NCBI RefSeq assembly: GCF_902459465.1
Contig: NC_047063.1
Location: forward strand, 1,798,001 to 1,862,000
DNA from: Asterias rubens
Taxonomy: Eukaryota
Length of the DNA stretch: 64,000 nucleotides
Direction of reading: 5' to 3'
Part shown: piece by piece, positions 3,901 to 54,032 of the stretch
Layout of the letters: every line of letters starts with the position of its first letter
Position numbering within the stretch: the stretch's first letter is position 1
Translations under genes and position numbers: made by a program
Notes under the pieces: generated by a model
Told to the model about the DNA's origin: nothing
The model's database searches: none
The model's input: only the letters and a program-made list of their open reading frames with translations

Positions 3901-6900
3901 AAGATCAAAGGGATGTTATTGGCCCAATGACCAGGGGTCGATTTCACAAAGAGTTAGGACTCGTCTTACCTCGAGTTAGGACGAGTAACTCGTCTTAACT
4001 TAGGATTAATCTTAAGGTCCGCATGCTACAGTGCAAGATTAATCTTAAGTTAGGAAGAGTTTTGTGAAATCGACGGCAGGGCACAATTTTAAAGCACATT
4101 GAACCGGTTATTGTCAAATGTGCTATACAACAACTAGATATTAACTTTGGATTTTAAATTGGATTTATCTCCCACCACTAAAGTTGGTCTAGCCACAACC
4201 CTGTTTAAAATAACGGAAAACTTAAAATTGACAGAGATCTTTGCGTACCTGAATAGTAATCATCGTCCGTGCTCCGAACTGCACCTCTTTGATGGATCCC
4301 TCCTCCTCAAACCGGAAATACTCTGGATCTAAATAAACAGTCATCCTGTAATCCTCATTCTCCTTGTACATCTCTACTCCATCTAAGATGAAGCCAAAGG
4401 TGACCACACCCAACTCAGGTGAGGATAGTCGCGAGTTGTTGCTTGGGGCGAGGAAATCACTTAAATCTGGCGTCTTGCAAGTCATTGCTGTGTCTTGGAC
4501 ATCGAAACAGTTCTGTTTCACACAAAAATGATGACTTGTTCAGTATAAGAATAACACCTTATGGACTGCTTAAGTAGAATGGTTCACAAAGTTTTGTTTT
4601 TGTTTGCACATGAAATAGCAGTATATTCTGTACTTACCAATGGTTTAACTGGCGGAAGATCTGGCCCAACATAAAACACCATCTGAGGCTCTTGAATCAC
4701 ATTCAAATGATCACCATTCACTTCCACTAATAATCCACCACTAAAAAGGAAAAGAGATATTCTCCATTAGTACTCCACACTAAAAGCTACACATAAAAGC
4801 ACATTCATACTCAAGCAATATTGAACATTTCAGAAATGTCTTCTTCTGTAAGATTCCACCTTAAGAAAATATTTTCTCTATTAATACTGTAACAATAATA
4901 AGTAGCTTGAAACTTTGCAAAGCGGAAACATAACTAACAGAGACTAGGTTTGTAGAAACATTATGTGAATATCTCTTTCTGAGTAGTGTTGGTTCTGAAA
5001 AGAACCAGTGGTTAACGACTCAACGTTTCAATCACTATGCGTCTTCACAATTCGTCTTCAGGAGAATGCTGGACTGTGTTGCTGGACGCTGCTGTATCAA
5101 TATAGAACATTTCAAACATCTCTTGTTCTGTAAGATTTAACCTTTTGAAAATACTTTCTATATTAATACTCTATCAATATTAAACATTTCAAAAATGTCT
5201 TCCTCTTAGTTTGGGGCTAAACTCACCTGAGTATAGTGGTCATCCGATTTACACTGTTTACTATAGGGTCGGCTGCGTATGAGAAGTTACTATCACTCCT
5301 GACCTCACCGAGATCATCAAAGGTCATCATAACCGAACCCGTAGTGCCTTCCTCAGACTGTGATGTTATGCAGCTAATCTGGGACACACTGCGTACAAAA
5401 AGATAAAACATGAACAACAACCTTTTCAAATACACCTTTTAAGTAGGATTTGAAACTTTGCATAGTGGAAGTATAACTTGGAGAGGTTTGCGGTAACATG
5501 TGAATATCCCTTTTGAGTAGTGTTGGTTCTAAAAAGAACCGACGGTTAACAACTCAACGCTTCGATGAGTATACCCCTCTCTTAATATTTATGAATATGG
5601 TACGTCACAATGCTAACTCACAACGAGGCGATGGGCGCAGCCACTGCAAGTGATGGGGGACGTGCGCCCATAGCCTCATTTTGGGAAAGAATTATGACGT
5701 CATGCATAAATATTAAGAGAGACGTATGCCCTGATCGTCTTCAGGAGAATGCTGGACTGTGTTGCTGGATGCTGCTTAAATACTAGGCTTGGTGGTGTGT
5801 GAAGCCAGAAACTGGATAAGCTGGGCTAGGTCAATACTAGTTAAAAGACATATTTACATGGTGTTATCGCAAACCTCTCGTAGAAATACACCTTTTGTAG
5901 TTTAGGGTATTGATGATGGGATGACTTACTTTGTGGGTCCATCGAGACTGCACGGCATGCCTGCTGCTATGATACTTTGCTGGCTTCCTGCGTTCAGGTC
6001 GGTTCCAGACAACGTGATCCTGGTTCCTCCTGACTTGGGTCCATCGGCCGGTCTGAAGGAGGTTATTACCGGAATCTTTCCACAAAAGAAAAAAACAGGA
6101 ATTTGAGGTCAATTTATGCGATAAGATTACATACTAGCTGCAGATCCAAAGGAGAGGTAAAATCATTAAAGTTTTTGGGCTTTGGTGTTTGAAGCAGATC
6201 GATGTAGGGTCTGTTGTACATTACCCACATTGAATAGAGCAAACTGAAACCCATTTGTCCCCTTCAAATAAGAGCAGTCTCGCACATACCATTAGGAACC
6301 TCTGATTCAAACTGAGATTGTGTAAGGAAAAACGTTGACAAAAACCCTTGACATCCCATATTCTTCAAAAACATCATTGCCAAAATGAAGGATTCAGAAG
6401 GAATAGGGTGGTCGTCCCAAACAACGTTTACTTCACACTACGTCAAGCACTCCAATCTTGTTTGGCCGAACAATTAAGTGTGGAGTGACAAAGCAGAAGA
6501 GGATATGGAAAGATTGATGTCACCTGGGCAAAAATGCCCTGGGAGTCATGGTTTATGGAGCCCATCGGTCGAAAATGCGCAAAACTTGCGCAGCTGTACC
6601 TGAAGATGATTTAAATAACGAATACTCACCACGTATGCAAAGTCGTCTTCGGATATGGCCTCTTCCGTTGTGGTATTGTTTTTGCCTAACATGACTCTTA
6701 CAGGTCCAGCTGTAACCTCTGTACTTGCTTGGGTCAGGCAGACGATTCTGTTGCAGAAAGAAACAAAGATTTGAAATCCTGGGTCAAGGCCTGGACGACT
6801 AGTGAAATTTACTACTCGACTAGTCGCGTTTTCAAATAGTAGCGACTACGAAACTTATCGCGAATAATGTTTAAATCCCAAGCAAGATGCATTGCGGCAT

Positions 6901-9900
6901 AATGTTTGCCGCGGGCGCCAAGGTAACAATCACGCTGAAAGAACTAAAGAATTGTGACACTAATTATGTTGTCATGAATAGTCGTGAGCGAAACAATTGG
7001 TTCACCAAACAGGTAGTCATGAAATTTTTGTAGTAGCTACGACTATTTTTGTAGTAGTCGTGGCGGCATGATTTATAAGCAGTTGAAAACCAATAGTCGT
7101 GACTCGACTAAGCAATCAATGGTCATGACTACAACACTAGTCGCACTAGATGCTCAAGCACATGGGTCCACTTTTACAGCTCTATTTACCACAGAATTCT
7201 GTGAGCAATTCTACAAGAACATCGGCCTAATTCTACAAGAGCTTCTTCCATTTGTTATGGTCAAAGAACATTTTCTTGCGCTGCTCTATTTCTTTGGAAT
7301 AGTCTTCCTGTGCATATTTGCCTGGCTAGTTCTTTTCACTGTTTTAAGTCTCTGCTAAAAACACACACGTTTGAAGCTGCTTATTTGTAAGCTGCGTACT
7401 TGTAATCTATCTTTCACTCATTGTCTAATTTATTGTTTTCTTTATGCACTTAGAGGCTTTAGCATTAGACGCTTTCCAAATGTCTATGTTATTATTATTA
7501 CTATTAAATTTGGCCTAGGTCACCTACAAGTTGTGTACTGAAAAATAAAAAACTGTGAGCAGCTTAAAATGGCAAGTTAAAAATATAACTAAATTCCCTA
7601 TATTATGACTGGACATACCTCTCCGCCTCGCTGTACTCTTTAACATCACATTTGATTCCAGCTACTCTGATCTCTATAACATCATCTCTGCTCTTGCCCA
7701 AGTTGTAACCCAAGATAGTCAGGTTGGTGTTCCCTCGAATGTGACCACTTTGAGGATGAAACTAAAAGAAAAGTGAAAAGAAAAAAAGATAAAAGTTGAT
7801 CTATTTATTTAGCAACGGACAGAACAGAATCAGTGATGAAAATACATCCCAAAAATGAAACAAAAAACTTACCAGAGTCCAAAGCTCTGGTATGGTCAGT
7901 CACAACCTCTAAGGAACTTTCAATTTCTCAGTTCAGAAAGAACTTAAAAACTCACCTCTTCAACAATAGGCACTTTAGCAAAATCATTCAGGCTTTATAA
8001 TTCAAGAGCTTTGAAGGCAATGAGTTGTTCCAATGAAACAACGAGCTTATTACATTTACTTTTAATCACGGTGTCTTGTTTTTTTATTGTGCTATATGAT
8101 AGGTCTCTTAATTCAAATGTAGTCCCAAATACCTGGCAGGAAAATACTGCAAGTTAAAGTGCCTTGAGCATCACTGATTGACTGATATGCATGCTATTTA
8201 AGAAGCCACTATTATTGTTATCATTAATCTGTAATGCGTAGTCAAGGAACCTGATGCAGTTGGCCACATCAATCTATTAAGGACATGTCACAGGATTGAT
8301 ACTTCAAAAACAATGATGCTAAATGGAAGGAAATAACCTTGCTAGTCAGCATGATTAATTTGACGCCTGTACAACAAATTCGAGCTGTATTAATCCATGA
8401 CAACACTAGGTTAGGGTCATGTGGAAGTCCTTAATTCCTCGAGAGATTTAGGGCTTTGTAACAGGAGATGCACGCAAGCTTAATGTCCATGGAAAATTAG
8501 GCACAACTAACAGTGGCTTCATCAAACTCATCTGAGGAAGAAGCAAAGTGCCAAGTCAAAACAACTTAATCCATAATGTTTATATAGTTTGCTAGATCTT
8601 GAAAGCATCTTTTGAATCCTAACAGATTATCTTTACCTTCTCCAATTTTCAAAACAGAGTGGAATAACTGGAATAATATTCAAGGATTTTAATCATAACC
8701 CTGTCCTACAAATCCATCAACTGACAAAGAGGTGGTTATTAAAATGAATCCTTGACAACGGTGAATATTTGTTTGACTGTCAATGTTGCCGGCCCATAAT
8801 ATTGAACCGTAAGACAGAACAACAGACAAACATACATCAACAAACCATCAGGGCCCAATTTCATAGAGCTGCCTAAGCACAACAACTTGCTTAGCATAAT
8901 ATTTCTTCCTTGATAAAAACAGGATTATCAACCAAACTTTCACTTGATTTTCAGGATAAGCAAACAACAGCTGAATACCAGTAACAAGCAGTATGCAACA
9001 AATAGAAATTTGGTTGGTAATCCTGTTATTATCAAGGAAATTTCATGCCAAGCAAATTTTTGTGCTTAGCAGCTCTATGAAATTGGGCCCAGGACATAGG
9101 TGTGTGCAACTTAGCCACATCCCCTACTGGTCATCATTATGCAATGACTCGATGGAACGCACAAATCGCACTTAAACCAGAAGTCTATGAAAGACAGATA
9201 GACAGACAGACTAACAAAAAACCTACTGATCCAACGGTAGAATCAGGACGTAATTTTGTCCCATGTTGGCCATCGTCATACTTTGACATCAGGGAACACA
9301 CTTTGGAATTCTCACACTAACCATGGAGGTAGAAGAGCAGAGATCTATGGACAGACAAACAAACAAATAACAAACAAACAAACAGACACCCCAACCAACA
9401 AACAAACAACCTACCGAGCTGACAGTAGGATCAGGACATAAACCGTCTTCCCCATTCAGCCATGTCTCCTGCTGGCCACACCTTGACTCCATGGAACACT
9501 CTTTGGTACTCTCACACCAACCGCAATCAAACTTGCTATCCAGCATAAGGCATTTGCCACAGTTAGTTCTTGGCATTGCACACTTGTAGAGGGTAACTAC
9601 AAGAAAAAAGGAGAGAAAAACTTGTTTTTATTTGTTTTAGGGTGTCATGGCTGAGTGGTTAAGAGCACCGAATTCAAGTTCTGGTGGTTAAGTCATCGGA
9701 GTATGGGTTCCGGTCCTGGTAAGTCCTGACACTTGTCCTTGAGCAAGATACTTTGCTTCTCTTCACCTAGGGATATAAATTAGTACCTGTGAGGGTGGAG
9801 GGTAGAGGTTGATATTGTGTATAAAAAAGTCTTGGGACCCCTATGGTTGCCCAGGTTGTAAACTCCCCAGGGAGCTGAGAAAGATTAAAGGAATGTTATT

Positions 9901-15900: not shown

Positions 15901-18900
15901 CCTTATCTAGCCTTATCATAATTACTTAAAACAAAAATCATAAAGGAAAAACAATAATCGTTTTAAAATTGTATTGTCACAATACATTAATGAAGTTACT
16001 AAAAATTTAATATATTGCCAGCTGATCATTGTTAACTTCTGTGACATTTAATCTCAAAATTACAGTTTCCAATTAAAGGTACATTTTCCTCAATGGTCAA
16101 ATTTCGAATCAATCTCAAGATCAACAACAACAACAAAACGTCAGGCCATCAATTTGTTCTTATTTTTTCATTTCTATTTTTGTTCACCAAGTACTCATAA
16201 ACTTACCTCCCGATATCCAACCACACCAGTTGCGATACAGCTGCTGGAATCACCCATACACCGATTCTCATGGACACACCAGTTACACATGAACGCATTG
16301 TCTACACATTTGGTACAGCTATCAAATGCGCTGCAGTTGTACAGGTCAAAGGTTGTGTTGACGATGAGCATATCAGTCTCCGTGGATCGGATGGACAGCG
16401 GTATGGACAGAGAGCCTGTCAAATTAAACACAAAATTTGATTATGAAGGTAAAATTAAGTGGTTTAGCTGGTTGGGGTCGGACAAAGTGGAGCAGACCGC
16501 AGTATTTTCAAAAGATCGTCTGTTCGAACCAGGTTTCACAATTTTCCAACACAGTCTTCTATTATGAATATCAATAATTGAATGATTTAAGTGAGTCCTT
16601 TATCAATCTAAACACAGGCCTTATACTTCACCGGAGGCAACGAAAGTGACTGCCTCCATGCCCCCTGGTTATTGCCTTGGTGCCCTTGAAATGCTCTAGT
16701 AGAAATTTACAATTTCCTCATATGGTGGCCCCTTACTCAAAACAGAGCACGCAGGCCTGTAAAAGTTAGATCCCCTTAAGGTGATCCCCTGGCTGCTGCT
16801 TTCCAGGTTGTATTGTAAACTTGGGTGTGATTCCTGTCCACACGGCAGTTAATGGTCGTATGGCTTCTGAATGGCACCCCCTGCACAAAGATATTGATAA
16901 AAAAAGGGAGGCCGCCAACATAGGGCTAGAAAGATAGCTTAGTTGATAGAGCGCTGGCACGTTAATCCTGAGGTCGTTGGTTCAAATCCTGCTCTAGTCA
17001 ACTTTTCTTTGTTTAACCCCAATCTATTTGAATTTCGTTTAGTATACAGAATCCATTGAAGGTAGCATTTGCTTTACCAATTAAGGCTACAATATCTAAA
17101 TAAAAATACACTTAATAAACAAACAGCCGTCGATTTCACAAAACTCTTCCTAACTTAAGACTAATCTTAGGACTTAGGATGAGTCACAACCCTGCACTGT
17201 AGCATGCAGACCTTAAGATTAATCCTAAGTTAGGAAGAGTTACTCGTCCTAACTCGAGATAAGACGAGTCCTAGCTCTTTGTAAAATCGACGGCTGGGTT
17301 AGGAAAAAATATGAAATTCAATCTTGGGAGGTTTGCACTATAAACCAAAGTGTTGTTGCTCTTAGATACAGCACCTTGTTGTAGCAGCTGCTTTAAAATT
17401 ACATAACAGTGTCTTGTTGACACAGCTGTATATTAGCTCCCATGAGCTGTTTATGAATTTATCAGAAATTGTTGTTTTTGCTTCTGTTATTGTTATTGAT
17501 GTTGTTGCTTCTAGATTGCATATCTGTACCTTGTTCAAACAGCTGTACATTGGTTGTATCAGGGGAGTGGCAATTGACTGAGGAGTTCCCAATGGGTTCA
17601 GTCATACTGGCATCCAGGGCCGTTGAGCCAAGATCTCCAAACACACACTCGTAGGAATAGTCCAAGCTGCTGTTGAGTTTGGGAAGACTTGTCACCAGGA
17701 TCTCAAGCTGTGACAAAGAAAGAAAGAAGGTCTTAAATAGCGCATTTCACAATAACTGGTTTAATGCGCTTTACATTAATTAGTGCCTTAGGGCCAATAA
17801 CATCCCTTTAATTTTTCTCAGCTCACTTGGGAGTATATACAACGTGGGCAACCGTAGCGCTCCAGCGGCTTTTTCATGCACAATATCAACCTCTACCAGC
17901 ATCACAGGTACCCATTTATACTCTCGGGTGAAGAGAAGCAATTAAAGTAAAGTATCTTGCTCAAGGACACAAAAGCCATGACCAGGATTCGAACCCCAAT
18001 CCGATGACTTAACCACCAGAACTTGAATTCAATGTTCTTAACCACTCGACCATGACACTCTACCGCATGTATTAGGCCTTGAAATAACAAGTCACTAACA
18101 GCTCAATTGGTGCCTTGTGCTTTTGCTGTAGTCAGTAGTTCCCTCCAAAAGGTTCCAATACAAACCTACATTTTCCCCATACCAGAGGAAAATTGCTGTG
18201 CCCCTTCAAGAACGAAGTTCAAGGCCTGATATAATAATGAGCATGGATGAGCACAAAATATTGTCCAATACATTATTATTATTATTGCTAGAGTCAGATA
18301 AAAAAACATGATGGAGATGATAAACTCTGTTTGAACTCTATGCTCTTAACAGCTATTCGTTTCCTTGTATTGTCAAAACATTGCGCATCTAAATAATTCT
18401 GTAAAACTTCCACAAAATGTCCATGCAAAGTTTAAACTCCATTTAGAGTTCATTATGGAGTTGGGCCAACTATTAAGCCTTCAGCAACATCAATAAAAAG
18501 GTGTTTTTTTTTACCTCTGGCATAGCAAGTAACCAAATTATATTTTAAAGAGAATTGTTTTTCTTCGAATTCAGCTTAACTTCTACAGTAGCAATCCTCT
18601 GGTAATTGGCACGTGTACCAGCCACTTTTTAAAACCAAATGAGGTTATAGATACCCCCCCCCCTTAAAAAAAAGGCTTGTATTTTAATTTTAAAATAACT
18701 CCCAAATTACAAAACCTCTTTAAAGTTTAATCAACGATGGAGTATTATAAAGAATCATAAAGCTCATCAAGGTGACAGCAAACTGTTCATATGTAAAGAG
18801 AAAGTCTGCCGTCAGGAAATATTGGCTTAGTTTTTCCCTGTCGCATTACGGTTGGTTTGGCATGTGAGTTATAACACTATATTACCATTTCAAGAGCCTT

Positions 18901-39053: not shown

Positions 39054-41398
39054 TCAATGGGAGAACGCAGCTTTACGAAAACCTAACCATAGTGAATGGT
39101 AGTAAAACCTTGAGATGTTACTTTGGTTTTGTAACCATTAGTTCTAGGAGACCTGTAATAAGGTGGTTACACACCAATCACTTCCTTCCTGAGGGAAGGA
39201 ACTCTCACTTCCCATCCACAACAATTTGTCAAACTTTTCTGGTCACATTTAAATCAAGTAAAAGATGCAGGGTGTTTCTGACATGGTTTCAAACAATACA
39301 CCATCATGTCGGTTTTAAGGCCGGTGTCCAGTCTGTTCAGGGTTGGCCTGCTTTATCCCTATGGCTCTCCTACACACGATTAGTATTTAAAACAGTGTAC
39401 AAATTAAAAGGATTGCAAAGTTGACTCTGCAAGCCCATTAAATATTGATATTTTAACTGATTCAACCAGCCACTGTCACTGTCAAGCATTTGCAACACAT
39501 TCTACAAACATGTACTCATTCTAAATATGCCTTGCTTTAATTAAAAGTGGATTCTCTATGATGATGCTACGACAGTATCATAGGCGTTTTATAAGCAAGA
39601 CATTAATGCTTGACAACTTCACTTAACAGTGGCTAGGCGAAATCTGCTGGCTGGATATTTTTATTTTTTTGGAGTGGGTGTAAGGGGGGGTGAGGGTGGG
39701 TTTTGGGTGGGGTCAAGTAACTGTCTGGGTAATGAAATATGCAAGCAAGGTTATAACTGATGTTGGCAGGTTCCATTGGTGGCCACCCTGAGAAAATGCG
39801 CCAATAAAGTATGTTCTTCAACTCTTTTCATACTAATAAAAAAATCCTATATTGGACTGAAAAGCAGAAGCAGTCAAGCAATAGTCAAAATGAAAGTTTT
39901 TTTTTAATGAAACAGACTTACATTCCAAAGAAATACAGGAAATCCTTATGGGTTTTAAAACAAACAGATTTGGTTTTTACGATGGCCCTTTCATTGAAAA
40001 AGATGATAATAAGAATTACGTCGCTCAAATCCAAAGTTTTTTTAACGCAACCTCAGTAGTTATGAAAGTAAATTACTTTACAATTTACATGTTTGTGTCA
40101 CTGGTAAAAAAAAAAAAGATAAATGTTCCAATGCTCACTTCATATCAAAGACTACAATACATAAATCAACCAGGCCTAGAATATCACCAAGCATTATACA
40201 TGGGAGTGGTGAAAAAAACAGCTTTTCATACTGACATACAATCAATGAATTTCCACTTACAAGTTCGATGCCACTGTTGACTGCGGTTTGAAAACATAGA
40301 CAAACTTCCTGGTCTCTACCCCTGAAAAGCATCACCACTAGAACGAGACACTGCTATCAAACATATATCCAGTAGGCCACATCAACTATGATGAAAAGAA
40401 CATGAAAGATGGATCTCTAATCAAGTAAATATTACTACTGTACACGCGAGTGGAGATCAGTATCCAAACTAAAAAGCCACACACATGGACAGCAGCAAGC
40501 TCCGACAAACTCCTACTGGATAAGTGAAAATCATCATCCTGTGTGCCAGCCAACGCACTGGTTCAATTGATTAACCCTCAACCAACTCCCCCATGCTAAA
40601 AGTGGTATGACCTGCCGTCAACTATATGTCACAAACGACCAATCAACTACTACGTGAACGAATGCTCACTGCTCTTTCGTTTCTAGACAAAAAAGCAAAG
40701 TTCATTGTGATTTTTTTTTCAGTCGAGGGGACCCAATGGGATGCGAAGATCTATCAAAACTATTTCCAGCTGGATGGCAAACACAATTGCTCAATCAAAC
40801 GCATCCGGAAGCTAGTGCAGTGGTTCTGAAAAGGCCCTGTTAACTTTGACTATTCTAGAAGAATGGTGGTTCCTGTGTGGTTTATATGACCACTCTTGAG
40901 AGAGGGGGGAGGGTCAACTTTTGGTCACTGGCCGCTATCTAAACAGTTTAAGGAACCAAGTTCACCACAAAATCATAAATCACCTTTTGTCAAGTAAAAG
41001 CTTGCTATTAAATTTTTTCATCCCCAAATTTGTGATAAAATATCTCAATGAACGATTATGAAACATTTGAGGAAAACAAGTGTTACTTGATTTGTACCTA
41101 GAAACTGAACCTGGACCAGTAGGGGCAAAAACAAAATATGTGTAGCGTCTTGCCTTTTTAAAAAAGGAAAGCCTTTTTTTTCTTTTTTCTTCCTTTCAAA
41201 ATGGCCTGCTGACACATTTTTTAAGGCAACTATTAGGCCTACATAACAGCAAAGCTACATCATGCAATACAAAACAAATTTGTCAAGTCTAAAGTATTGT
41301 TTGAAGCTTTGCATGGTGTGGTAAACGGTAAACTTGCATGTACAACTATGTGTAAATCCCTTTTATGGGACTGTTTGCTCTGAAAAGAGCAGAGTGGT

Positions 41399-41438
41399 CT
41401 CGTCGTTTCGAACAGTTTACTCTGTTGGTCTTCAAGAG
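41399..41438 (-). ncRNA. Hammerhead-like motif copy 3 (related subfamily, decayed)
   Basis: CTC-TTGAAGA-C-CAACAG-agtaaa-CTGTTC-GAAA-CGAC-GAG. Confidence 0.5.
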
Positions 41439-44400
41439 AATATCATGTCTTGTTCATGCATAAACAAATTAAAAAACAGAACATTGCACAACAGTATAAC
41501 TACATCATGAATACAACAACTGTTATTACGTCATACAACAGCACTGAAATTCCATCTTTACACATCTGTTTTAATCACCAATTACCGTAGAGTTTTCAAC
41601 CGTCACTTGGTAATTTGACAGGCAATTAGATATTCTTATTAGGTTTAAGATGTATAACAATGTACAAGTCTGATAAGGTTCCTGGTTAATTTGATGTAAT
41701 TCCTAATGTCCTATTCTTGGCGCATAAAGTAGCAATGCAGGGTGCCGGATGTTTAGTATCAAAACAAATGAGCACCAGGCAGGACGTTGAACTATACTGG
41801 GGTAAAATATCGCGATCTGAAGAATGAATTGTAGAAGCGATTATAATGAAAGATGGTATAGTTTTGTTGTAGGCCTTTCAGAGTTATCAAAGTGTTATCA
41901 ATTGTTTTTCAATAATCTTTTTTACCCATCCACCATTACCAATTTTCAATTTCAAAATTGTTTTTGTTTCTACTCTTTTCCTTCCCTTGTTTTAAAAATT
42001 GAAATTACATTTTGATTTTTGATTTTCTTTTTTTTTTTAACCTTTTTCCAGTTTTTATTTTTTATTTTTTTATAATTGATTATATCCTGCCAATAATCCT
42101 GAATGGACCAGAGTTGCTTTGATTTTGATAAATACAAATTTTCTTGAGAACCGTGACAGAACGGCCTGAAACCAAGTTGGATTATGGGGTTTAGAGCCGA
42201 TATGGGCAAGAGAAATCATAAACATAAAGACATTACAATGTTGTTCAAGATTGTTTGAGGTTTTTTTTAAGGGGAGGTGGGTCCTTGCTCAAAAACATGA
42301 ATATCAAGTATTATTTTTTAATGTATTTCTTATATGTTTGCAATATTCAGTTTGAGCTAATAAAGTCTCAAGGATTTTCCCCAAAAATGAGCCTTGGTAA
42401 GAGTCTATAAAACTGTAAATAAAGAGACAACCTGTTTAGAAACCAACACTGTGTTTCTTTAATCATCGATTTGCTGTACCTTGCCTGACTGCCGTCGGTG
42501 GATCATGTTACAATCATTTACGAAGAAAACATGGATGTGGTCAAAGGAAACGCAATATCAATGTACTTTGCATCATCACACTACGTAACTTCATTGCAAA
42601 ACTCCCCAACAAAACTCCCCAACCGCTTCCGTCTTCTCATTGTTAAACAACATTTTTTAATTACAGTAATTTTTCCAGAATACAGCAATAAGAGTCATGG
42701 AGGTCGGGTTGGTGTAATGGTGTCTTGCCTCGATTTCCACCTCCATCTCATTCCCAGTGAATAGGGATTCGAGGCTAAAAACTTGATCTACAAAAAGTAT
42801 CAAAACCCTTTTAAGGTACCAAGGGGAAGACCCAGGCATCAAAGGACAAGGTCTCATCAGTGACCTTCAACAAATCTCCAGCTCAGCCCAACCGAAAAGG
42901 CGCCATTTATAGGCGCCATTTATAAGCCCCATTAGCTCCCAATAGACAAAGCAAAATGTCAGCCAACTAGGATTTGTAGCAACTTGAAAACCTTGTTCCA
43001 ATGGATTGAAGGATTTTAAAGAGACTTAGAGAGTAATTCACAATAGGCATCTTTTTTTGACTGTTGAACATCACACACCCAACGGCCTTTGTAAGTTTGG
43101 CCTTTCAATAAAGTTGTACTGGGGTGTGATTTGAAAGTAACTTCAGGCCCGACACTTCACGGCAGCAACGAAGGTAATTGCCTCCATGCCTGGGTGCCCT
43201 TGAAATTCTTCTGTACAAATGTATAATTTCCTCATAGGTTGCCCTTTACCAAGGGGAAAATGCTTAGTGCCCTTGCACTTTTAAAAACGAAGCACACAGG
43301 TCTGTAATTTACCTCTCATGAGTTGATCATACCTTAGAACTTCCCGCTCAACTGAGACGCCTAGTCACAGCGTGAAGGAAGGAACATGGTACACAACAAA
43401 AATGGATTCAGTATTGACCAAATTGATTTCCCGCAAGCAATCTCTGTAAGTAAATATTAAATTACTAGGATGAGGCTGTCTAGGTTTGCCTTTTCAACTC
43501 AACATTGTTGAATCAGGTACAGTTGGTATTACTAATCCTATGTGTGCACAGAGTCCTTGAACACATTCCATGGGTGTACTTCAAACAAACCTGACTAATG
43601 CATGGTCTAAACGCTGACACTATTCTAAATTTAAGAGAGCTATTTTATGGTTTGGTTCCAACTAAATTCCAGTTGATTTCAAAATATGGCTATGTTCAGC
43701 CTGCTGTGAAGAGTGTCAACCAAAAACTTGGCACATAAAATGCTGAAGGAGATTTTAGAGAGAACCCATTCTCAGGCCTTGGATTACACAGATGCTACTG
43801 TGGTTGGCCTCTCGCTGCCCTGGTCTTGGTCTTGGCCTTGGTGCCCCTTCACAAGTTTCACATACTCTTTAACATTTTCCAATGGAAGGGCCCTTAGCAA
43901 AATTAAAATGGCCTTGCTCTCTCAAAGATGAATTCCAGGCCTACTGTGTACATTCTGTTTACATGGATTTAAATCAATCCACCGCCATCTTACTTTATGG
44001 TAATAAAACCAACGACGAACCAATGGAAATCATACATTCACAGACTGGTCCAACCATGGAGGAATAATGGTCCAATAAGCAACGTTCTTATAGCCATTAG
44101 CTGAGGGTGCGACTGCCCTACACAATTTATCCTTTGTGCATAAAATCTATTTTACATCATCTATGCATTTTAAACACATTTGATATGAAGAATCATTTTT
44201 AGAAGAAGAATAGGATATTTGATACAACCTTTACATTGAAGGAACATTGATTGGGTAGTAAAACTTTCCAGATTTTTACAATCCATTCCCTACGCACAAT
44301 AAATACCATCTAGTCACGCCTCAGCTATCACAGCAGGCTAAAGTTAACCGGTCAATGCGTAACATACCTAGCTGTTACGTTTTTTAAATCGTTCAAACCT

Positions 44401-52740: not shown

Positions 52741-54032
52741 ATAACATGGTAATTGCATTTAATACACAGACAGTACACAGTTACTTCTGCACACAGGGGT
52801 GCGTTTTCGCAGTCGTAGACAATTTTAACTGTTTACTTCAATGTCCAGTGATCAACCAAAACATTGCAATACAGCCAGGAAAACGCACCCCAAATGTGCC
52901 ACCATATAAAACCTGTGCAGTTGAATGGTTTCAAATGGTTTGTTGCAAGCAAATCACCGTAAAATATCACCAGAATATAGAAAGTGAAGTTTAACATTCA
53001 GAAATCTTAACATTTTACGCATGGATAGCAGTGAAAAGGAAAGTTCTTATGTCCAGTTAGATGTAATAGATGCCTGTTTATCTAGACACTTTTATCAATT
53101 CAATCTGGCAACTTCATGTTTTGCTTTCCCAATTATTTCATACTAGTTACAAGGGTCAATGACCAAGCTTAGCTGGTCCCTGGTAATTGATTGGGAACTT
53201 GTCAGTGTTTAAGAACCTACCTCCTCTGGTTCCAACCAAGGACATCCTTGAGTAGTACATCAAGCCAGATGACTGCCAACTAGTCCGACTAAACACTGTT
53301 TTAATAATTTGTACACGCCAATCAGAATAACTTTAACATGATAGATACAATTTTGCCAGCCTGCAAAATCATTAGCCTAAATGCATTGAATACACAGTTA
53401 GTCATGTGACGCAGTTTTTGTAATTTGGTCGTGATCCATGGCTACACAGCAACAGGTTGTTGTAGCTTCTGACTGGCTCCACACACAAACATATTGAGGA
53501 AACAAGGAGAGAAGACGCCAACATTAGGGCTAAATAGCTCAGTTGGTAGAGCACCAACAGGTTTCTGGGAGTCGCAGATTCAAGTCATGCTGTAATCAAT
53601 TTGTCTGTGTTCATCTCAAAATTTGAATCAATTTCATTCACTGAATGCTCTCATGAAAAAAAAAAACATGTGAAAAGTTTGCCTCACTTGGTCATCGAAG
53701 TTGCAAGGAAATACTGATAGAAAAAATACCCTCGTTGCATAGAACTAGATGTGTTTTCTGATGACTGAGAGGCTTCATGCCGAAGCCTTTCTCAGGTTCA
53801 AATTTTTAGGATGAAAAACTACCCTTTTCTCAAAAAGGGTGTCATTCCTAACAATGTTTTGTAATATCAACAACTCTTCAAGTTCAAGGTATTCTTTACC
53901 AAGTAAGTTTGTATGGTCATTAATTTTAGGGGTAATTCACCACTGTATCCATTACAAAATCCTACCGCTAAAAAAATTGACAATTTACGACTTCAGGACT
54001 GAACTTGACCCAGACAGGAGACAAGGCGTTTC

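What the first reader, a model, noticed from the sequence alone, without database searches (positions are those of the whole stretch)
5019..5064. Hammerhead-ribozyme motif inside an intronic repeat family, in host-gene sense
Seen: the minus strand reads CTC-CTGAAGA-C-[hairpin]-GAAA-CGTT-GAG. That is the catalytic core CUGANGA...GAAA, a CUC/GAG stem I, a loopless self-complementary stem III (AACGTT) and a GUU cleavage triplet. Established: minimal type-I hammerheads with palindromic stem III are carried by Penelope-like elements and retrozymes, and are thought to cleave as dimers. Inference: this ~200-bp repeat is a Penelope-like terminal repeat or retrozyme family, possibly uncatalogued in this lineage. 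No in-window copy is intact, but the consensus of the three copies (CTGAAGA C GATCAG-agcata-CTGATC GAAA CGTT GAG) is a plausible complete ribozyme.
Basis: partly seen in the sequence, partly recalled or inferred. Interest (0 to 1): 0.8.

Follow-up and report, generated by a model that had tools for sequence, protein, structure and literature searches.

The report
Dead Penelope-type hammerhead repeat copy
The motif is real, but it is a mutated, inactive copy of a roughly 2,000-copy mobile repeat derived from Penelope-like retrotransposons, which are already known to carry such minimal hammerhead ribozymes; the unusual part is that the repeat also carries a near-perfect copy of the signal that ends histone mRNAs.

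Summary
The minus strand at 5064..5019 reads CTC CTGAAGA C [24 nt] GAAA CG TT GAG. Markov shuffles of the window give 0.02 such matches. This copy has lost helix II. The second copy (5830..5440) is split by a 149-nt MITE and reads GAAG. A third, diverged copy lies at 41438..41399.

Genome-wide, the repeat has about 2,000 first-look candidates. It meets every published feature of the metazoan Penelope-like-element (PLE) "min-HHR": an extra base after A9, a G10.1-C11.1 pair, a 6-bp helix II, no loop 3, a palindromic 15.2/16.2 and a short helix I.

Two autonomous PLE families in the same genome (RT plus GIY-YIG, 921 and 931 aa) carry the same architecture about 20 nt from their 3' ends, with covarying helices. 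At least 7 of 30 loci show the PLE-typical inverted, 5'-truncated partner copy. This is a new member of a known kind, and the window copies are dead.

Thirteen nt downstream of the hammerhead sits a histone-mRNA-type stem-loop plus downstream element that closely matches this genome's own histone genes. The scan already noted this fusion on other DNA of this genome (s1-150093, s1-150168). Catalysis is untested.

The parts
5019..5064 (-). Decayed min-hammerhead of repeat copy 1. The core boxes, 3-bp helix I and palindromic ACGU are intact. Helix II is destroyed.
   Evidence: (30.9 bits)
4907..5093 (-). Repeat copy 1 (short 5' form), lying in the 486-nt intron 4741-5226 of a minus-strand plexin-like gene.
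4967..5011 (-). Histone-mRNA-type module of copy 1: stem-loop GGTTCT TTTC AGAACC at 5006..4991 and the purine-rich downstream element AAAGAGA at about 4978..4972.
   Evidence: RF00032, 29.8 bits, gathering score 34, E 6e-6
5440..5830 (-). Repeat copy 2 (long 5' form), lying in intron 5389-5929. The hammerhead halves lie at 5747..5724 and 5574..5553. The 3' box reads GAAG.
5575..5723 (.). MITE-like 149-nt insertion with terminal inverted repeats of about 19 nt, inside loop 2 of copy 2. It explains the spurious mir-592 hit.
5501..5545 (-). Histone-type stem-loop module of copy 2.
   Evidence: 21.5 bits
5831..5883 (+). Inverted, 5'-truncated fragment of the same family, facing the 5' end of copy 2. 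This is the PLE-type insertion signature.
41290..41443 (-). Third copy, from a diverged subfamily. The hammerhead is at 41438..41399: box TTGAAGA, one compensated helix II pair, C at 10.1 and A at 16.1. The stem-loop TGCTCT TTTC AGAGCA is at 41391..41376, with two compensated pairs.
5227..5388 (-). Host coding exon lying between the two repeat-bearing introns.
   Evidence: spliced contigs in four runs
5930..6075 (-). Host coding exon encoding an IPT/TIG domain.

Best explanation
The site is a mutationally dead copy of an old, non-autonomous retroelement family with about 2,000 first-look candidates. The family derives from, and was mobilised by, Penelope-like elements (PLEs). The family's master sequence read CUC CUGAAGA C GAUCAG-agcaua-CUGAUC GAAA CG UU|GAG. 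This is a PLE-type minimal type-I hammerhead without helix III. A single motif cannot close helix III. Two motifs can pair through the palindrome ACGU (extendable to AACGUU) to form an intermolecular helix III, and each would then cleave after U17 (GUU|GAG). In autonomous PLEs of this genome the same motif sits 20-24 nt before the 3' end of the inserted unit. Its most likely role is therefore to process multimeric or read-through transcripts into unit RNAs used by the PLE RT/GIY-YIG protein. The repeat is a mini pseudo-LTR: the 3'-UTR end with the hammerhead is joined to a 5'-UTR module of a 931-aa-type PLE, and that module includes a histone-type stem-loop. Shown here: the sequence architecture, the covariation between families, the homology to PLE parts, the PLE-type insertion signature, and the intronic sense position. 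Inferred: dimerisation, self-cleavage and mobilisation in trans. The window copies themselves do nothing; the host introns are spliced normally.
For: The motif is present, against 0.02 expected by chance. The genome-wide consensus from 29 copies is an intact motif, and 6 of 29 copies still pass a strict descriptor. All min-HHR features from PMC4209133 are met. PLE family A reads CCU CUGAAGA A GGUCCG-gau-UGGAUC GAAA GC UA|AGG. PLE family B reads CCU UCGAGAA A GACUC-ugcua-GGGUC GAAA CG UC|AGG. Both have the same layout, with helix I, helix II and 15.2/16.2 all changed in a compensated way. On 10 chosen sequences, 97.6% of cells are paired, against 17-43% when partners are slid. On 49 distinct model hits, 92% are paired and 21 cells are changed on both sides, against 5.2 in shuffles. 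Another family at L017:1356-1395 has helix II GACUAG/CUAGUC, with two pairs swapped. The PLE ORFs contain RVT_1 plus a C-terminal GIY-YIG domain. The repeat's stem-loop and GGTGTTACCGC module is homologous to L048:1968-2050, just upstream of the family B start codon. Inverted, 5'-truncated partner copies occur in at least 7 of 30 loci, as described for PLEs. RNAcofold predicts the intermolecular AACGUU helix, with the dimer 4.7 kcal/mol more stable than two monomers.
Against: No Rfam hammerhead model matches, even at E up to 10 on 200-nt stretches, although the control PLE motif also fails. Helix I has only 3 bp. The extra base is C, which in the monomer MFE fold pairs with G12 and would sequester a catalytic residue. 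Published min-HHRs cleave poorly in vitro. The youngest PLE here, family B with 99% identical copies, has U3/A8 plus U4C in the 5' box, so recent transposition did not need a canonical core. Conservation of hammerhead positions within the family is only slightly above the rest of the element: 91.3% against 85.8%, P about 0.03, on a sample chosen by BLAST. All RNA runs available were assembled contigs, so no cleavage ends could be seen.
Confidence: 0.8

Rival explanations
1. The identity is the same (a PLE-derived repeat), but the hammerhead-shaped fold is not a working ribozyme in vivo. It is kept as a structured RNA landmark near the 3' end, for binding or positioning the PLE RT/EN, or it simply hitch-hikes on the element.
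For: The active family B has the non-canonical 5' box UCGAGAA. Genomic copies always keep a 20-115 nt tail beyond the cleavage site, so the reverse-transcribed RNA was uncleaved there. PAc, a PLE, initiates reverse transcription internally (PMC11167929). Min-HHR activity in vitro is low. Naiad PLEs thrive without hammerheads, and Craig et al. suggest hammerheads may simply parasitise PLEs.
Against: CUGANGA, GAAA, G10.1-C11.1, U16.1, H17 and the palindrome are retained across families whose helices have fully diverged. That is hard to explain without the catalytic fold.
Confidence: 0.3
2. The repeat is mainly a dispersed copy of a histone-gene 3' end. The stem-loop and downstream element, acting through SLBP and U7, are its working part, and the hammerhead likeness is incidental.
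For: RF00032 hits occur in nearly every copy at 18-32 bits. The stem-loop and downstream element are the best conserved part of the family, at 94.7% (P<0.0002). They closely match the genome's own H2A/H2B 3' ends.
Against: There is no histone coding sequence upstream. The hammerhead architecture recurs in PLEs that lack the stem-loop, such as family A. The copies run 50-95 nt past the predicted U7 cut site.
Confidence: 0.05
3. The repeat is a tRNA-derived or other pol-III SINE moved by a LINE, with a chance hammerhead-like string.
For: Some copies have an upstream stretch ending ...CGCACCA that recalls a tRNA 3' end. The genome is rich in tRNA-like SINEs.
Against: No tRNA-model hit abuts any copy. 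The upstream stretch is a 230-nt family-specific extension without a cloverleaf. There is no poly(A) or simple-repeat tail. Inverted partner copies and homology to PLE parts point to PLE machinery.
Confidence: 0.03
4. The motif is a chance match with no biological meaning.
For: The core boxes carry little information. Neither copy near the site (copies 1 and 2) folds into a hammerhead.
Against: Shuffles give 0.02 hits per window. The motif is the consensus of a large family and recurs, with covarying helices, in autonomous PLEs.
Confidence: 0.01

Closest known systems
Minimal hammerheads (min-HHR) of metazoan Penelope-like elements (Cervera and de la Pena 2014, PMC4209133)
   Same: The shared features are the CUGANGA and GAAA boxes, an unpaired base between 9 and 10.1, a G10.1-C11.1 pair, a long helix II (6 bp), no helix III or loop 3, a palindromic 15.2/16.2, a short helix I, thousands of mostly solitary copies, and pairs on opposite strands 100-700 bp apart.
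   Different: Helix I is 3 bp; 4-5 bp is typical, and 2 bp occurs in D. virilis. The extra base is C, which can pair with G12. The motif is followed 13 nt later by a histone-type stem-loop and downstream element, which that paper does not describe.
Non-LTR retrozymes of animals (Cervera and de la Pena 2020, PMC7229834; Li et al. 2026 preprint, 10.64898/2026.07.22.740005)
   Same: These are small, non-autonomous, hammerhead-bearing elements thought to derive from PLE pseudo-LTRs and to be moved by PLEs.
   Different: Here the sampled copies are dispersed singles or head-to-head pairs with a minimal motif. Only the diverged subfamily shows one 3-unit array of about 180 nt. Circular RNA was not tested. 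The preprint reports exclusion from introns in vertebrates, whereas copies 1 and 2 here are intronic.
Histone mRNA 3' stem-loop and histone downstream element (Rfam RF00032)
   Same: The shared features are a 6-bp stem starting GG, a UUUC loop, A/C-rich flanks and a purine-rich AAAAGAGAT element 10-11 nt after the stem. This closely matches this genome's own H2A/H2B 3' ends.
   Different: The third stem pair is U-A instead of C-G. This family scores 18-32 bits, below the gathering score of 34. No histone gene lies upstream. The element continues past the predicted cut site.
Schistosoma Sm-alpha SINE-like hammerhead repeats (Ferbeyre et al. 1998, cited in PMC4209133; details from my own knowledge)
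   Same: It is a high-copy short retroposon carrying a type-I hammerhead that needs dimers.
   Different: Sm-alpha has a canonical hammerhead with a short helix III and a tRNA-like head. No tRNA-like head was found here.
CChMVd (+) hammerhead with an extra base after A9 (De la Pena and Flores 2001, cited in PMC4209133; details from my own knowledge)
   Same: It has one extra nucleotide between A9 and 10.1.
   Different: In that viroid a C at this position was detrimental because it favours inactive folds. The family here has C, while PLE families A and B have A.

Membership tests
PLE min-HHR (PMC4209133) | Core boxes CUGANGA and GAAA | tested here: met
   The family consensus and window copy 1 have both boxes. 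Copy 2 reads GAAG and copy 3 reads TTGAAGA.
PLE min-HHR (PMC4209133) | [quoted passage not shown] | tested here: met
   It is C in the family (86% of copies) and A in PLE families A and B.
PLE min-HHR (PMC4209133) | G10.1-C11.1 pair and a long helix II (6-8 bp) | tested here: met
   The consensus has GAUCAG/CUGAUC. This is not met in window copy 1, which has 2 bp.
PLE min-HHR (PMC4209133) | No loop 3; complementary 15.2/16.2 giving a palindrome for dimer formation | tested here: met
   The family and PLE B have ACGU; PLE A has AGCU. Cofolding gives an intermolecular helix.
PLE min-HHR (PMC4209133) | Short helix I (4-5 bp typical) | tested here: inconclusive
   Only 3 bp are present (CUC/GAG). 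PLE A and B also have 3-4 bp. D. virilis has 2 bp according to the paper.
PLE min-HHR (PMC4209133) | Located in a PLE pseudo-LTR or its derivative | tested here: met
   The positional homologue lies 20-24 nt from the 3' end of autonomous PLE A and B. The repeat's 3' half is homologous to the PLE B 5' UTR.
PLE min-HHR (PMC4209133) | Self-cleavage after H17, as a dimer | not testable with these tools
   Only assembled contigs were available, so no RNA ends could be read.
Rfam hammerhead families (types I, II, III, HH9, HH10) | Match to a curated covariance model | tested here: not met
   There is no hit at gathering score or at E up to 10. The control min-HHR of a bona fide PLE also gives no hit, so this test is uninformative for minimal motifs.
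Non-LTR retrozyme | Head-to-tail tandem arrays of hammerhead-bearing units | tested here: not met
   None of the 30 sampled loci has a direct tandem copy upstream. One 3-unit array exists in the diverged subfamily.
Non-LTR retrozyme | Abundant circular RNA of unit length | not testable with these tools
   No raw reads were available.
Penelope-like element (autonomous) | [quoted passage not shown] | tested here: not met
   No such ORF lies within 1.5 kb of any of the 30 copies or in the window copies. The ORFs exist elsewhere in the genome. The family is therefore non-autonomous.
Penelope-like element insertions | An inverted, 5'-truncated copy adjacent to the 5' end, and a tail beyond the hammerhead | tested here: met
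   At least 7 of 30 loci show this, plus window copy 2 and L044. The features are described in PMC8557442.
Histone 3' stem-loop (RF00032) | Score at or above the gathering threshold of 34 bits | tested here: not met
   This family scores 18-32 bits and the window copy 29.8 bits. Other dispersed families in the genome reach 37-44 bits.
tRNA-derived SINE | A tRNA-like pol-III head at the 5' end | tested here: not met
   No tRNA-model hit abuts any copy. The 5' extension has no cloverleaf.

The most novel reading that the evidence does not exclude
PLE-derived elements of this genome have captured the host's complete histone pre-mRNA 3' processing signal, that is, the SLBP-binding stem-loop plus the U7-binding downstream element, and placed it 13 nt after the hammerhead. 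The element RNA would then be shaped by a ribozyme on one side and by the histone SLBP/U7 machinery on the other. The gain would be a non-polyadenylated end, S-phase or oocyte/embryo-linked stability, or SLBP-driven translation of uncapped ribozyme-cut RNA. In family B the stem-loop sits in the 5' UTR without the purine-rich element. This would be a new way for retroelements to exploit a host RNA pathway.
Probability: 0.3. Interest if true: 0.7.

Novelty: new member of a known kind. Interest (0 to 1): 0.4.

Why it matters
For the hammerhead itself the result is ordinary. It adds one more animal genome in which PLE-type minimal hammerheads are spread in thousands of mostly dead copies, including inside introns of a plexin-like gene, where they have no visible effect on splicing.

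Two side results are worth keeping. First, the hammerhead is fused to a faithful copy of the species' own histone mRNA end signal, and several unrelated dispersed families in this genome carry that signal. I found no paper describing this in the searchable library. It gives a concrete, testable link between retroelement RNA and the SLBP/U7 pathway.

Second, the youngest PLE family has a non-canonical hammerhead core (U3/A8 plus U4C). This bears on the open question of whether PLEs need ribozyme catalysis at all.

Tried and rejected
- **Rfam hammerhead models.** I ran them on the whole window at gathering score, on 4000-6200 at E up to 10, on 20 loci with intact copies, and on a 211-nt stretch around an intact copy. 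There was no hit. I do not count this as evidence against the motif, because the min-HHR of an autonomous PLE also gives no hit.
- **tRNA-derived SINE idea.** It was prompted by ...CGCACCA upstream of some copies. I rejected it because there is no tRNA hit next to any copy and the stretch is part of a 230-nt family-specific extension.
- **A linked RT ORF.** I looked within 1.5 kb of 30 copies and found none.
- **More sequence from the genome.** I tried to fetch six further candidate PLE families and the loci of the diverged subfamily. The closest autonomous partner therefore could not be pinned down beyond 'family-B-like'.
- **RNA ends at the cleavage site or after the stem-loop.** All 14 runs offered are assembled contigs, so starts and ends cannot be read. 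The contig breaks near 5052-5057 are most likely repeat-induced, and I did not interpret them.
- **Preferential conservation within the family.** There is only a weak excess for the hammerhead (P about 0.03). It is confounded by the BLAST-based sampling and by CpG decay at 15.2/16.2. I do not rely on it.
- **Literature on histone stem-loops in SINEs or PLEs.** I found nothing relevant. One search failed on syntax.
- **The 457-aa ORF that ends in a histone stem-loop.** Pfam gave no family.
Full report
**Observation.**
On the minus strand, 5064..5019 reads CTC CTGAAGA C, then 24 nt, then GAAA CG TT GAG. I scanned with a descriptor requiring the two core boxes, a complementary 15.2/16.2 pair, U16.1, a non-G at 17 and a 3-bp helix I. 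It hits once in the 64-kb window on both strands. In 200 Markov shuffles it hits 0.02 times per window. The string is there and is not a chance match.

The hairpin between the boxes is broken in this copy. Only 2 bp of helix II can form. The family alignment shows a 6-nt insertion that looks like a local duplication of TGAAGACG, plus changes in the 3' strand. The MFE fold has neither helix.

**The copies in the window.**
Copy 1 spans 5093..4907. Copy 2 spans about 5830..5440. Its hammerhead is split in loop 2 by a 149-nt MITE-like insertion (5575-5723), and its 3' box reads GAAG. It belongs to a diverged subfamily.

Spliced transcript contigs from four runs define exons 4248-4512, 4638-4740, 5227-5388, 5930-6075 and 6630-6749. 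The introns read CT..AC on the plus strand, so the gene is on the minus strand. Copies 1 and 2 therefore lie in two neighbouring introns in the gene's sense. Exon 5930-6075 encodes an IPT/TIG domain. The introns are removed normally in these contigs.

**The family.**
A genome search with copy 1 gave 2,012 first-look candidates. Forty were scored, at 77-90% identity. An alignment of 29 further copies gives a consensus that contains CTC CTGAAGA C GATCAG AGCATA CTGATC GAAA CG TT GAG. Six of the 29 copies still pass a strict descriptor with at least 4 bp in helix II.

Some copies carry a 5' extension of about 230 nt. Others are 5'-truncated, and the 3' end comes in a short and a long form. In at least 7 of 30 loci an inverted, 5'-truncated copy faces the 5' end of the direct copy. 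The same holds for window copy 2 (fragment 5831-5883) and for L044.

**Comparison with what is known about PLE hammerheads.**
Cervera and de la Pena (PMC4209133) describe the metazoan PLE min-HHR as follows:
- the two core boxes;
- an unpaired base between 9 and 10.1;
- a conserved G10.1-C11.1 pair;
- a long helix II;
- no helix III or loop 3;
- a palindromic 15.2/16.2;
- a short helix I;
- thousands of mostly solitary copies;
- pairs on opposite strands 100-700 bp apart;
- weak cleavage in vitro, and only as dimers.

The family consensus meets each sequence feature, with the one reservation that helix I has only 3 bp.

Craig et al. (PMC8557442) list the hallmarks of PLE insertions: strong 5' truncation, partial tandems, an adjacent inverted 5'-truncated copy, and a short tail. 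These are seen here.

**Autonomous PLEs in the same genome.**
A GIY-YIG profile search found 149 matches, many inside open frames of 921 or 931 aa. [quoted passage not shown]

Family A (921 aa) carries CCT CTGAAGA A GGTCCG gat TGGATC GAAA GC TA AGG, 24 nt before its 3' end in a (TA)n target.

Family B (931 aa; copies 99% identical) carries CCT TCGAGAA A GACTC tgcta GGGTC GAAA CG TC AGG, about 20 nt before its 3' end, followed by CCATTAAC. The repeat has TCGTTAAC at the same place.

The layout is thus identical in all three, while helix I, helix II and the 15.2/16.2 pair differ in compensated ways. On ten chosen sequences, 97.6% of cells pair, against 17-43% when partners are slid. On 49 distinct hits of a covariance model built from them, 92% pair and 21 cells are changed on both sides, against 5.2 in shuffles. 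Both alignments are selected or fitted to the structure, so these figures lean towards it. A further family at L017:1356-1395 has helix II GACTAG/CTAGTC, with two pairs swapped.

**What the repeat is made of.**
Its 3' half, consisting of the stem-loop, the downstream element and GGTGTTACCGCAAACCTC, is homologous to L048:1968-2050, about 100 nt upstream of the family B start codon. Subfamilies at L002:107-146 and L012:2832-2877 are intermediate in sequence.

The repeat therefore looks like a mini pseudo-LTR. The end of a PLE 3' UTR with its hammerhead is joined, after TTAAC, to the ORF-proximal stem-loop segment near the end of a B-like 5' UTR, with about 590 nt missing. No RT ORF lies near any sampled copy, so the family is non-autonomous.

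**Rfam.**
No hammerhead model matches the window, the 20 loci, or a 211-nt stretch around an intact copy. The min-HHR of autonomous PLE A also gives no hit on a 201-nt stretch. The negative result says only that Rfam models do not cover motifs without helix III.

**Mechanism.**
A single motif cannot form helix III. RNAcofold of two copies predicts an intermolecular AACGUU helix, and the dimer is 4.7 kcal/mol more stable than two monomers. Cleavage would fall after U17 (GUU|GAG).

Four points count against strong activity:
- Helix I has only 3 bp.
- The extra base is C, which pairs with G12 in the monomer MFE fold.
- Published min-HHRs cleave poorly.
- All genomic copies keep sequence beyond the cleavage site, so the reverse-transcribed RNA was uncut there. 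This fits the internal initiation of reverse transcription seen for another PLE (PMC11167929).

Family B, the youngest PLE here, has UCGAGAA. Older B-like relics have UUGAGAA, the U3/A8 covariant reported by Cervera and de la Pena. Family B therefore carries an additional U4C. From my own knowledge of hammerhead mutagenesis, this change strongly reduces catalysis.

I put the identity of the element at about 0.9. I put real self-cleavage of the master copy in vivo at about 0.4-0.5.

**The histone-type module.**
Thirteen nt after the predicted cleavage site, every copy has a 6-bp stem, a UUUC loop, A/C-rich flanks and, 10 nt further on, AAAAGAGAT. Rfam's Histone3 model scores it at 18-32 bits in nearly every copy, and at 29.8 bits (E 6e-6) in window copy 1.

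The two true histone genes in L058 read CAACC GGCTCT TTTC AGAGCC ACCAC (A/T)TATTC AAAAAAGAGAT. The repeat reads CCACC GGTTCT TTTC AGAACC AACAC TACTC AAAAGAGAT.

Within the family, this module is the best conserved part, at 94.7% against 85.8% for the rest (P<0.0002). The stem is kept by compensated changes in the third window copy (TGCTCT/AGAGCA) and in a related family (GGCTCT/AGAGCC, L060).

From my own knowledge, the known SLBP determinants are a G at stem position 2, U at loop positions 1 and 3, and a 6-bp stem with a 4-nt loop. All of these are present.

A genome-wide search with the Histone3 model gave a very large, rough candidate count. Of 75 scored hits, 73 were above the gathering score. 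They are spread over nearly all chromosomes and belong to several unrelated repeat families.

In PLE B the stem-loop sits in the 5' UTR and lacks the purine-rich element. PLE A has no stem-loop.

What the module does is open. The copies extend 50-95 nt past the predicted U7 cut site, so it did not define the 3' end of the transposing RNA. Earlier notes of the scan report the same fusion elsewhere in this genome (s1-150093, s1-150168). I found no paper on it.

**Verdict.**
The element is a new member of a known kind, the PLE min-HHR repeats. The window copies are inactive relics. The histone-type module and the non-canonical core of the youngest PLE are the points that deserve follow-up.

Noticed in passing
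window 4967-5011 and 5501-5545 (minus); L058, L051-L062: A histone-mRNA-type stem-loop plus downstream element is carried by this repeat and by several unrelated dispersed families. Of 75 scored genome hits to RF00032, 73 exceed the gathering score, and they lie on nearly all chromosomes. The repeat's module closely matches the genome's own H2A/H2B 3' ends.
   Followed up: partly
L048:5106-5142; L025:2655-2691 (minus); L048:5708-5780: The youngest PLE family (931-aa ORF, copies 99% identical) has the hammerhead 5' box UCGAGAA. Older relatives have UUGAGAA, the U3/A8 covariant. Recent transposition therefore went with a U4C core, which questions the need for catalysis.
   Followed up: partly
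L051-L057 and L059 (for example L051:97-1545): There is a near-identical multi-copy ORF of at least 457 aa on at least eight contigs, with no Pfam family. It has a C2H2-like C-terminus and ends 35 nt before a 44-bit histone stem-loop with a downstream element. It may be a mobile-element gene that uses histone-type 3' end formation.
   Followed up: partly
window 5575-5723: A MITE-like 149-nt insertion with terminal inverted repeats of about 19 nt sits inside loop 2 of repeat copy 2. Its hairpin causes a spurious mir-592 hit, and transcript-contig depth over it is very high.
   Followed up: no
G000:C11:14531260-14531793 (not fetched): Three consecutive same-strand copies of the diverged subfamily (the window 41443..41290 type) lie with a period of about 180 nt. 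This is a retrozyme-like tandem array.
   Followed up: no
L017:1356-1395 (minus): This is another hammerhead family, reading CTC CTGACAA T GACTAG agcaag CTAGTC GAAA CG TT GAG. Two helix II pairs are swapped relative to the main family, and no stem-loop follows.
   Followed up: no
window 16928-17000 and 53528-53598 (plus): These are weak tRNA-model hits of 33.4 and 29.8 bits. They are probably heads of tRNA-derived SINEs rather than tRNA genes. Similar hits occur in several fetched loci.
   Followed up: no
L046:5766-5800 and 9207-9250: PLE family A copies end in (TA)n microsatellite. This fits the target bias for (TA)n described for some PLEs.
   Followed up: no
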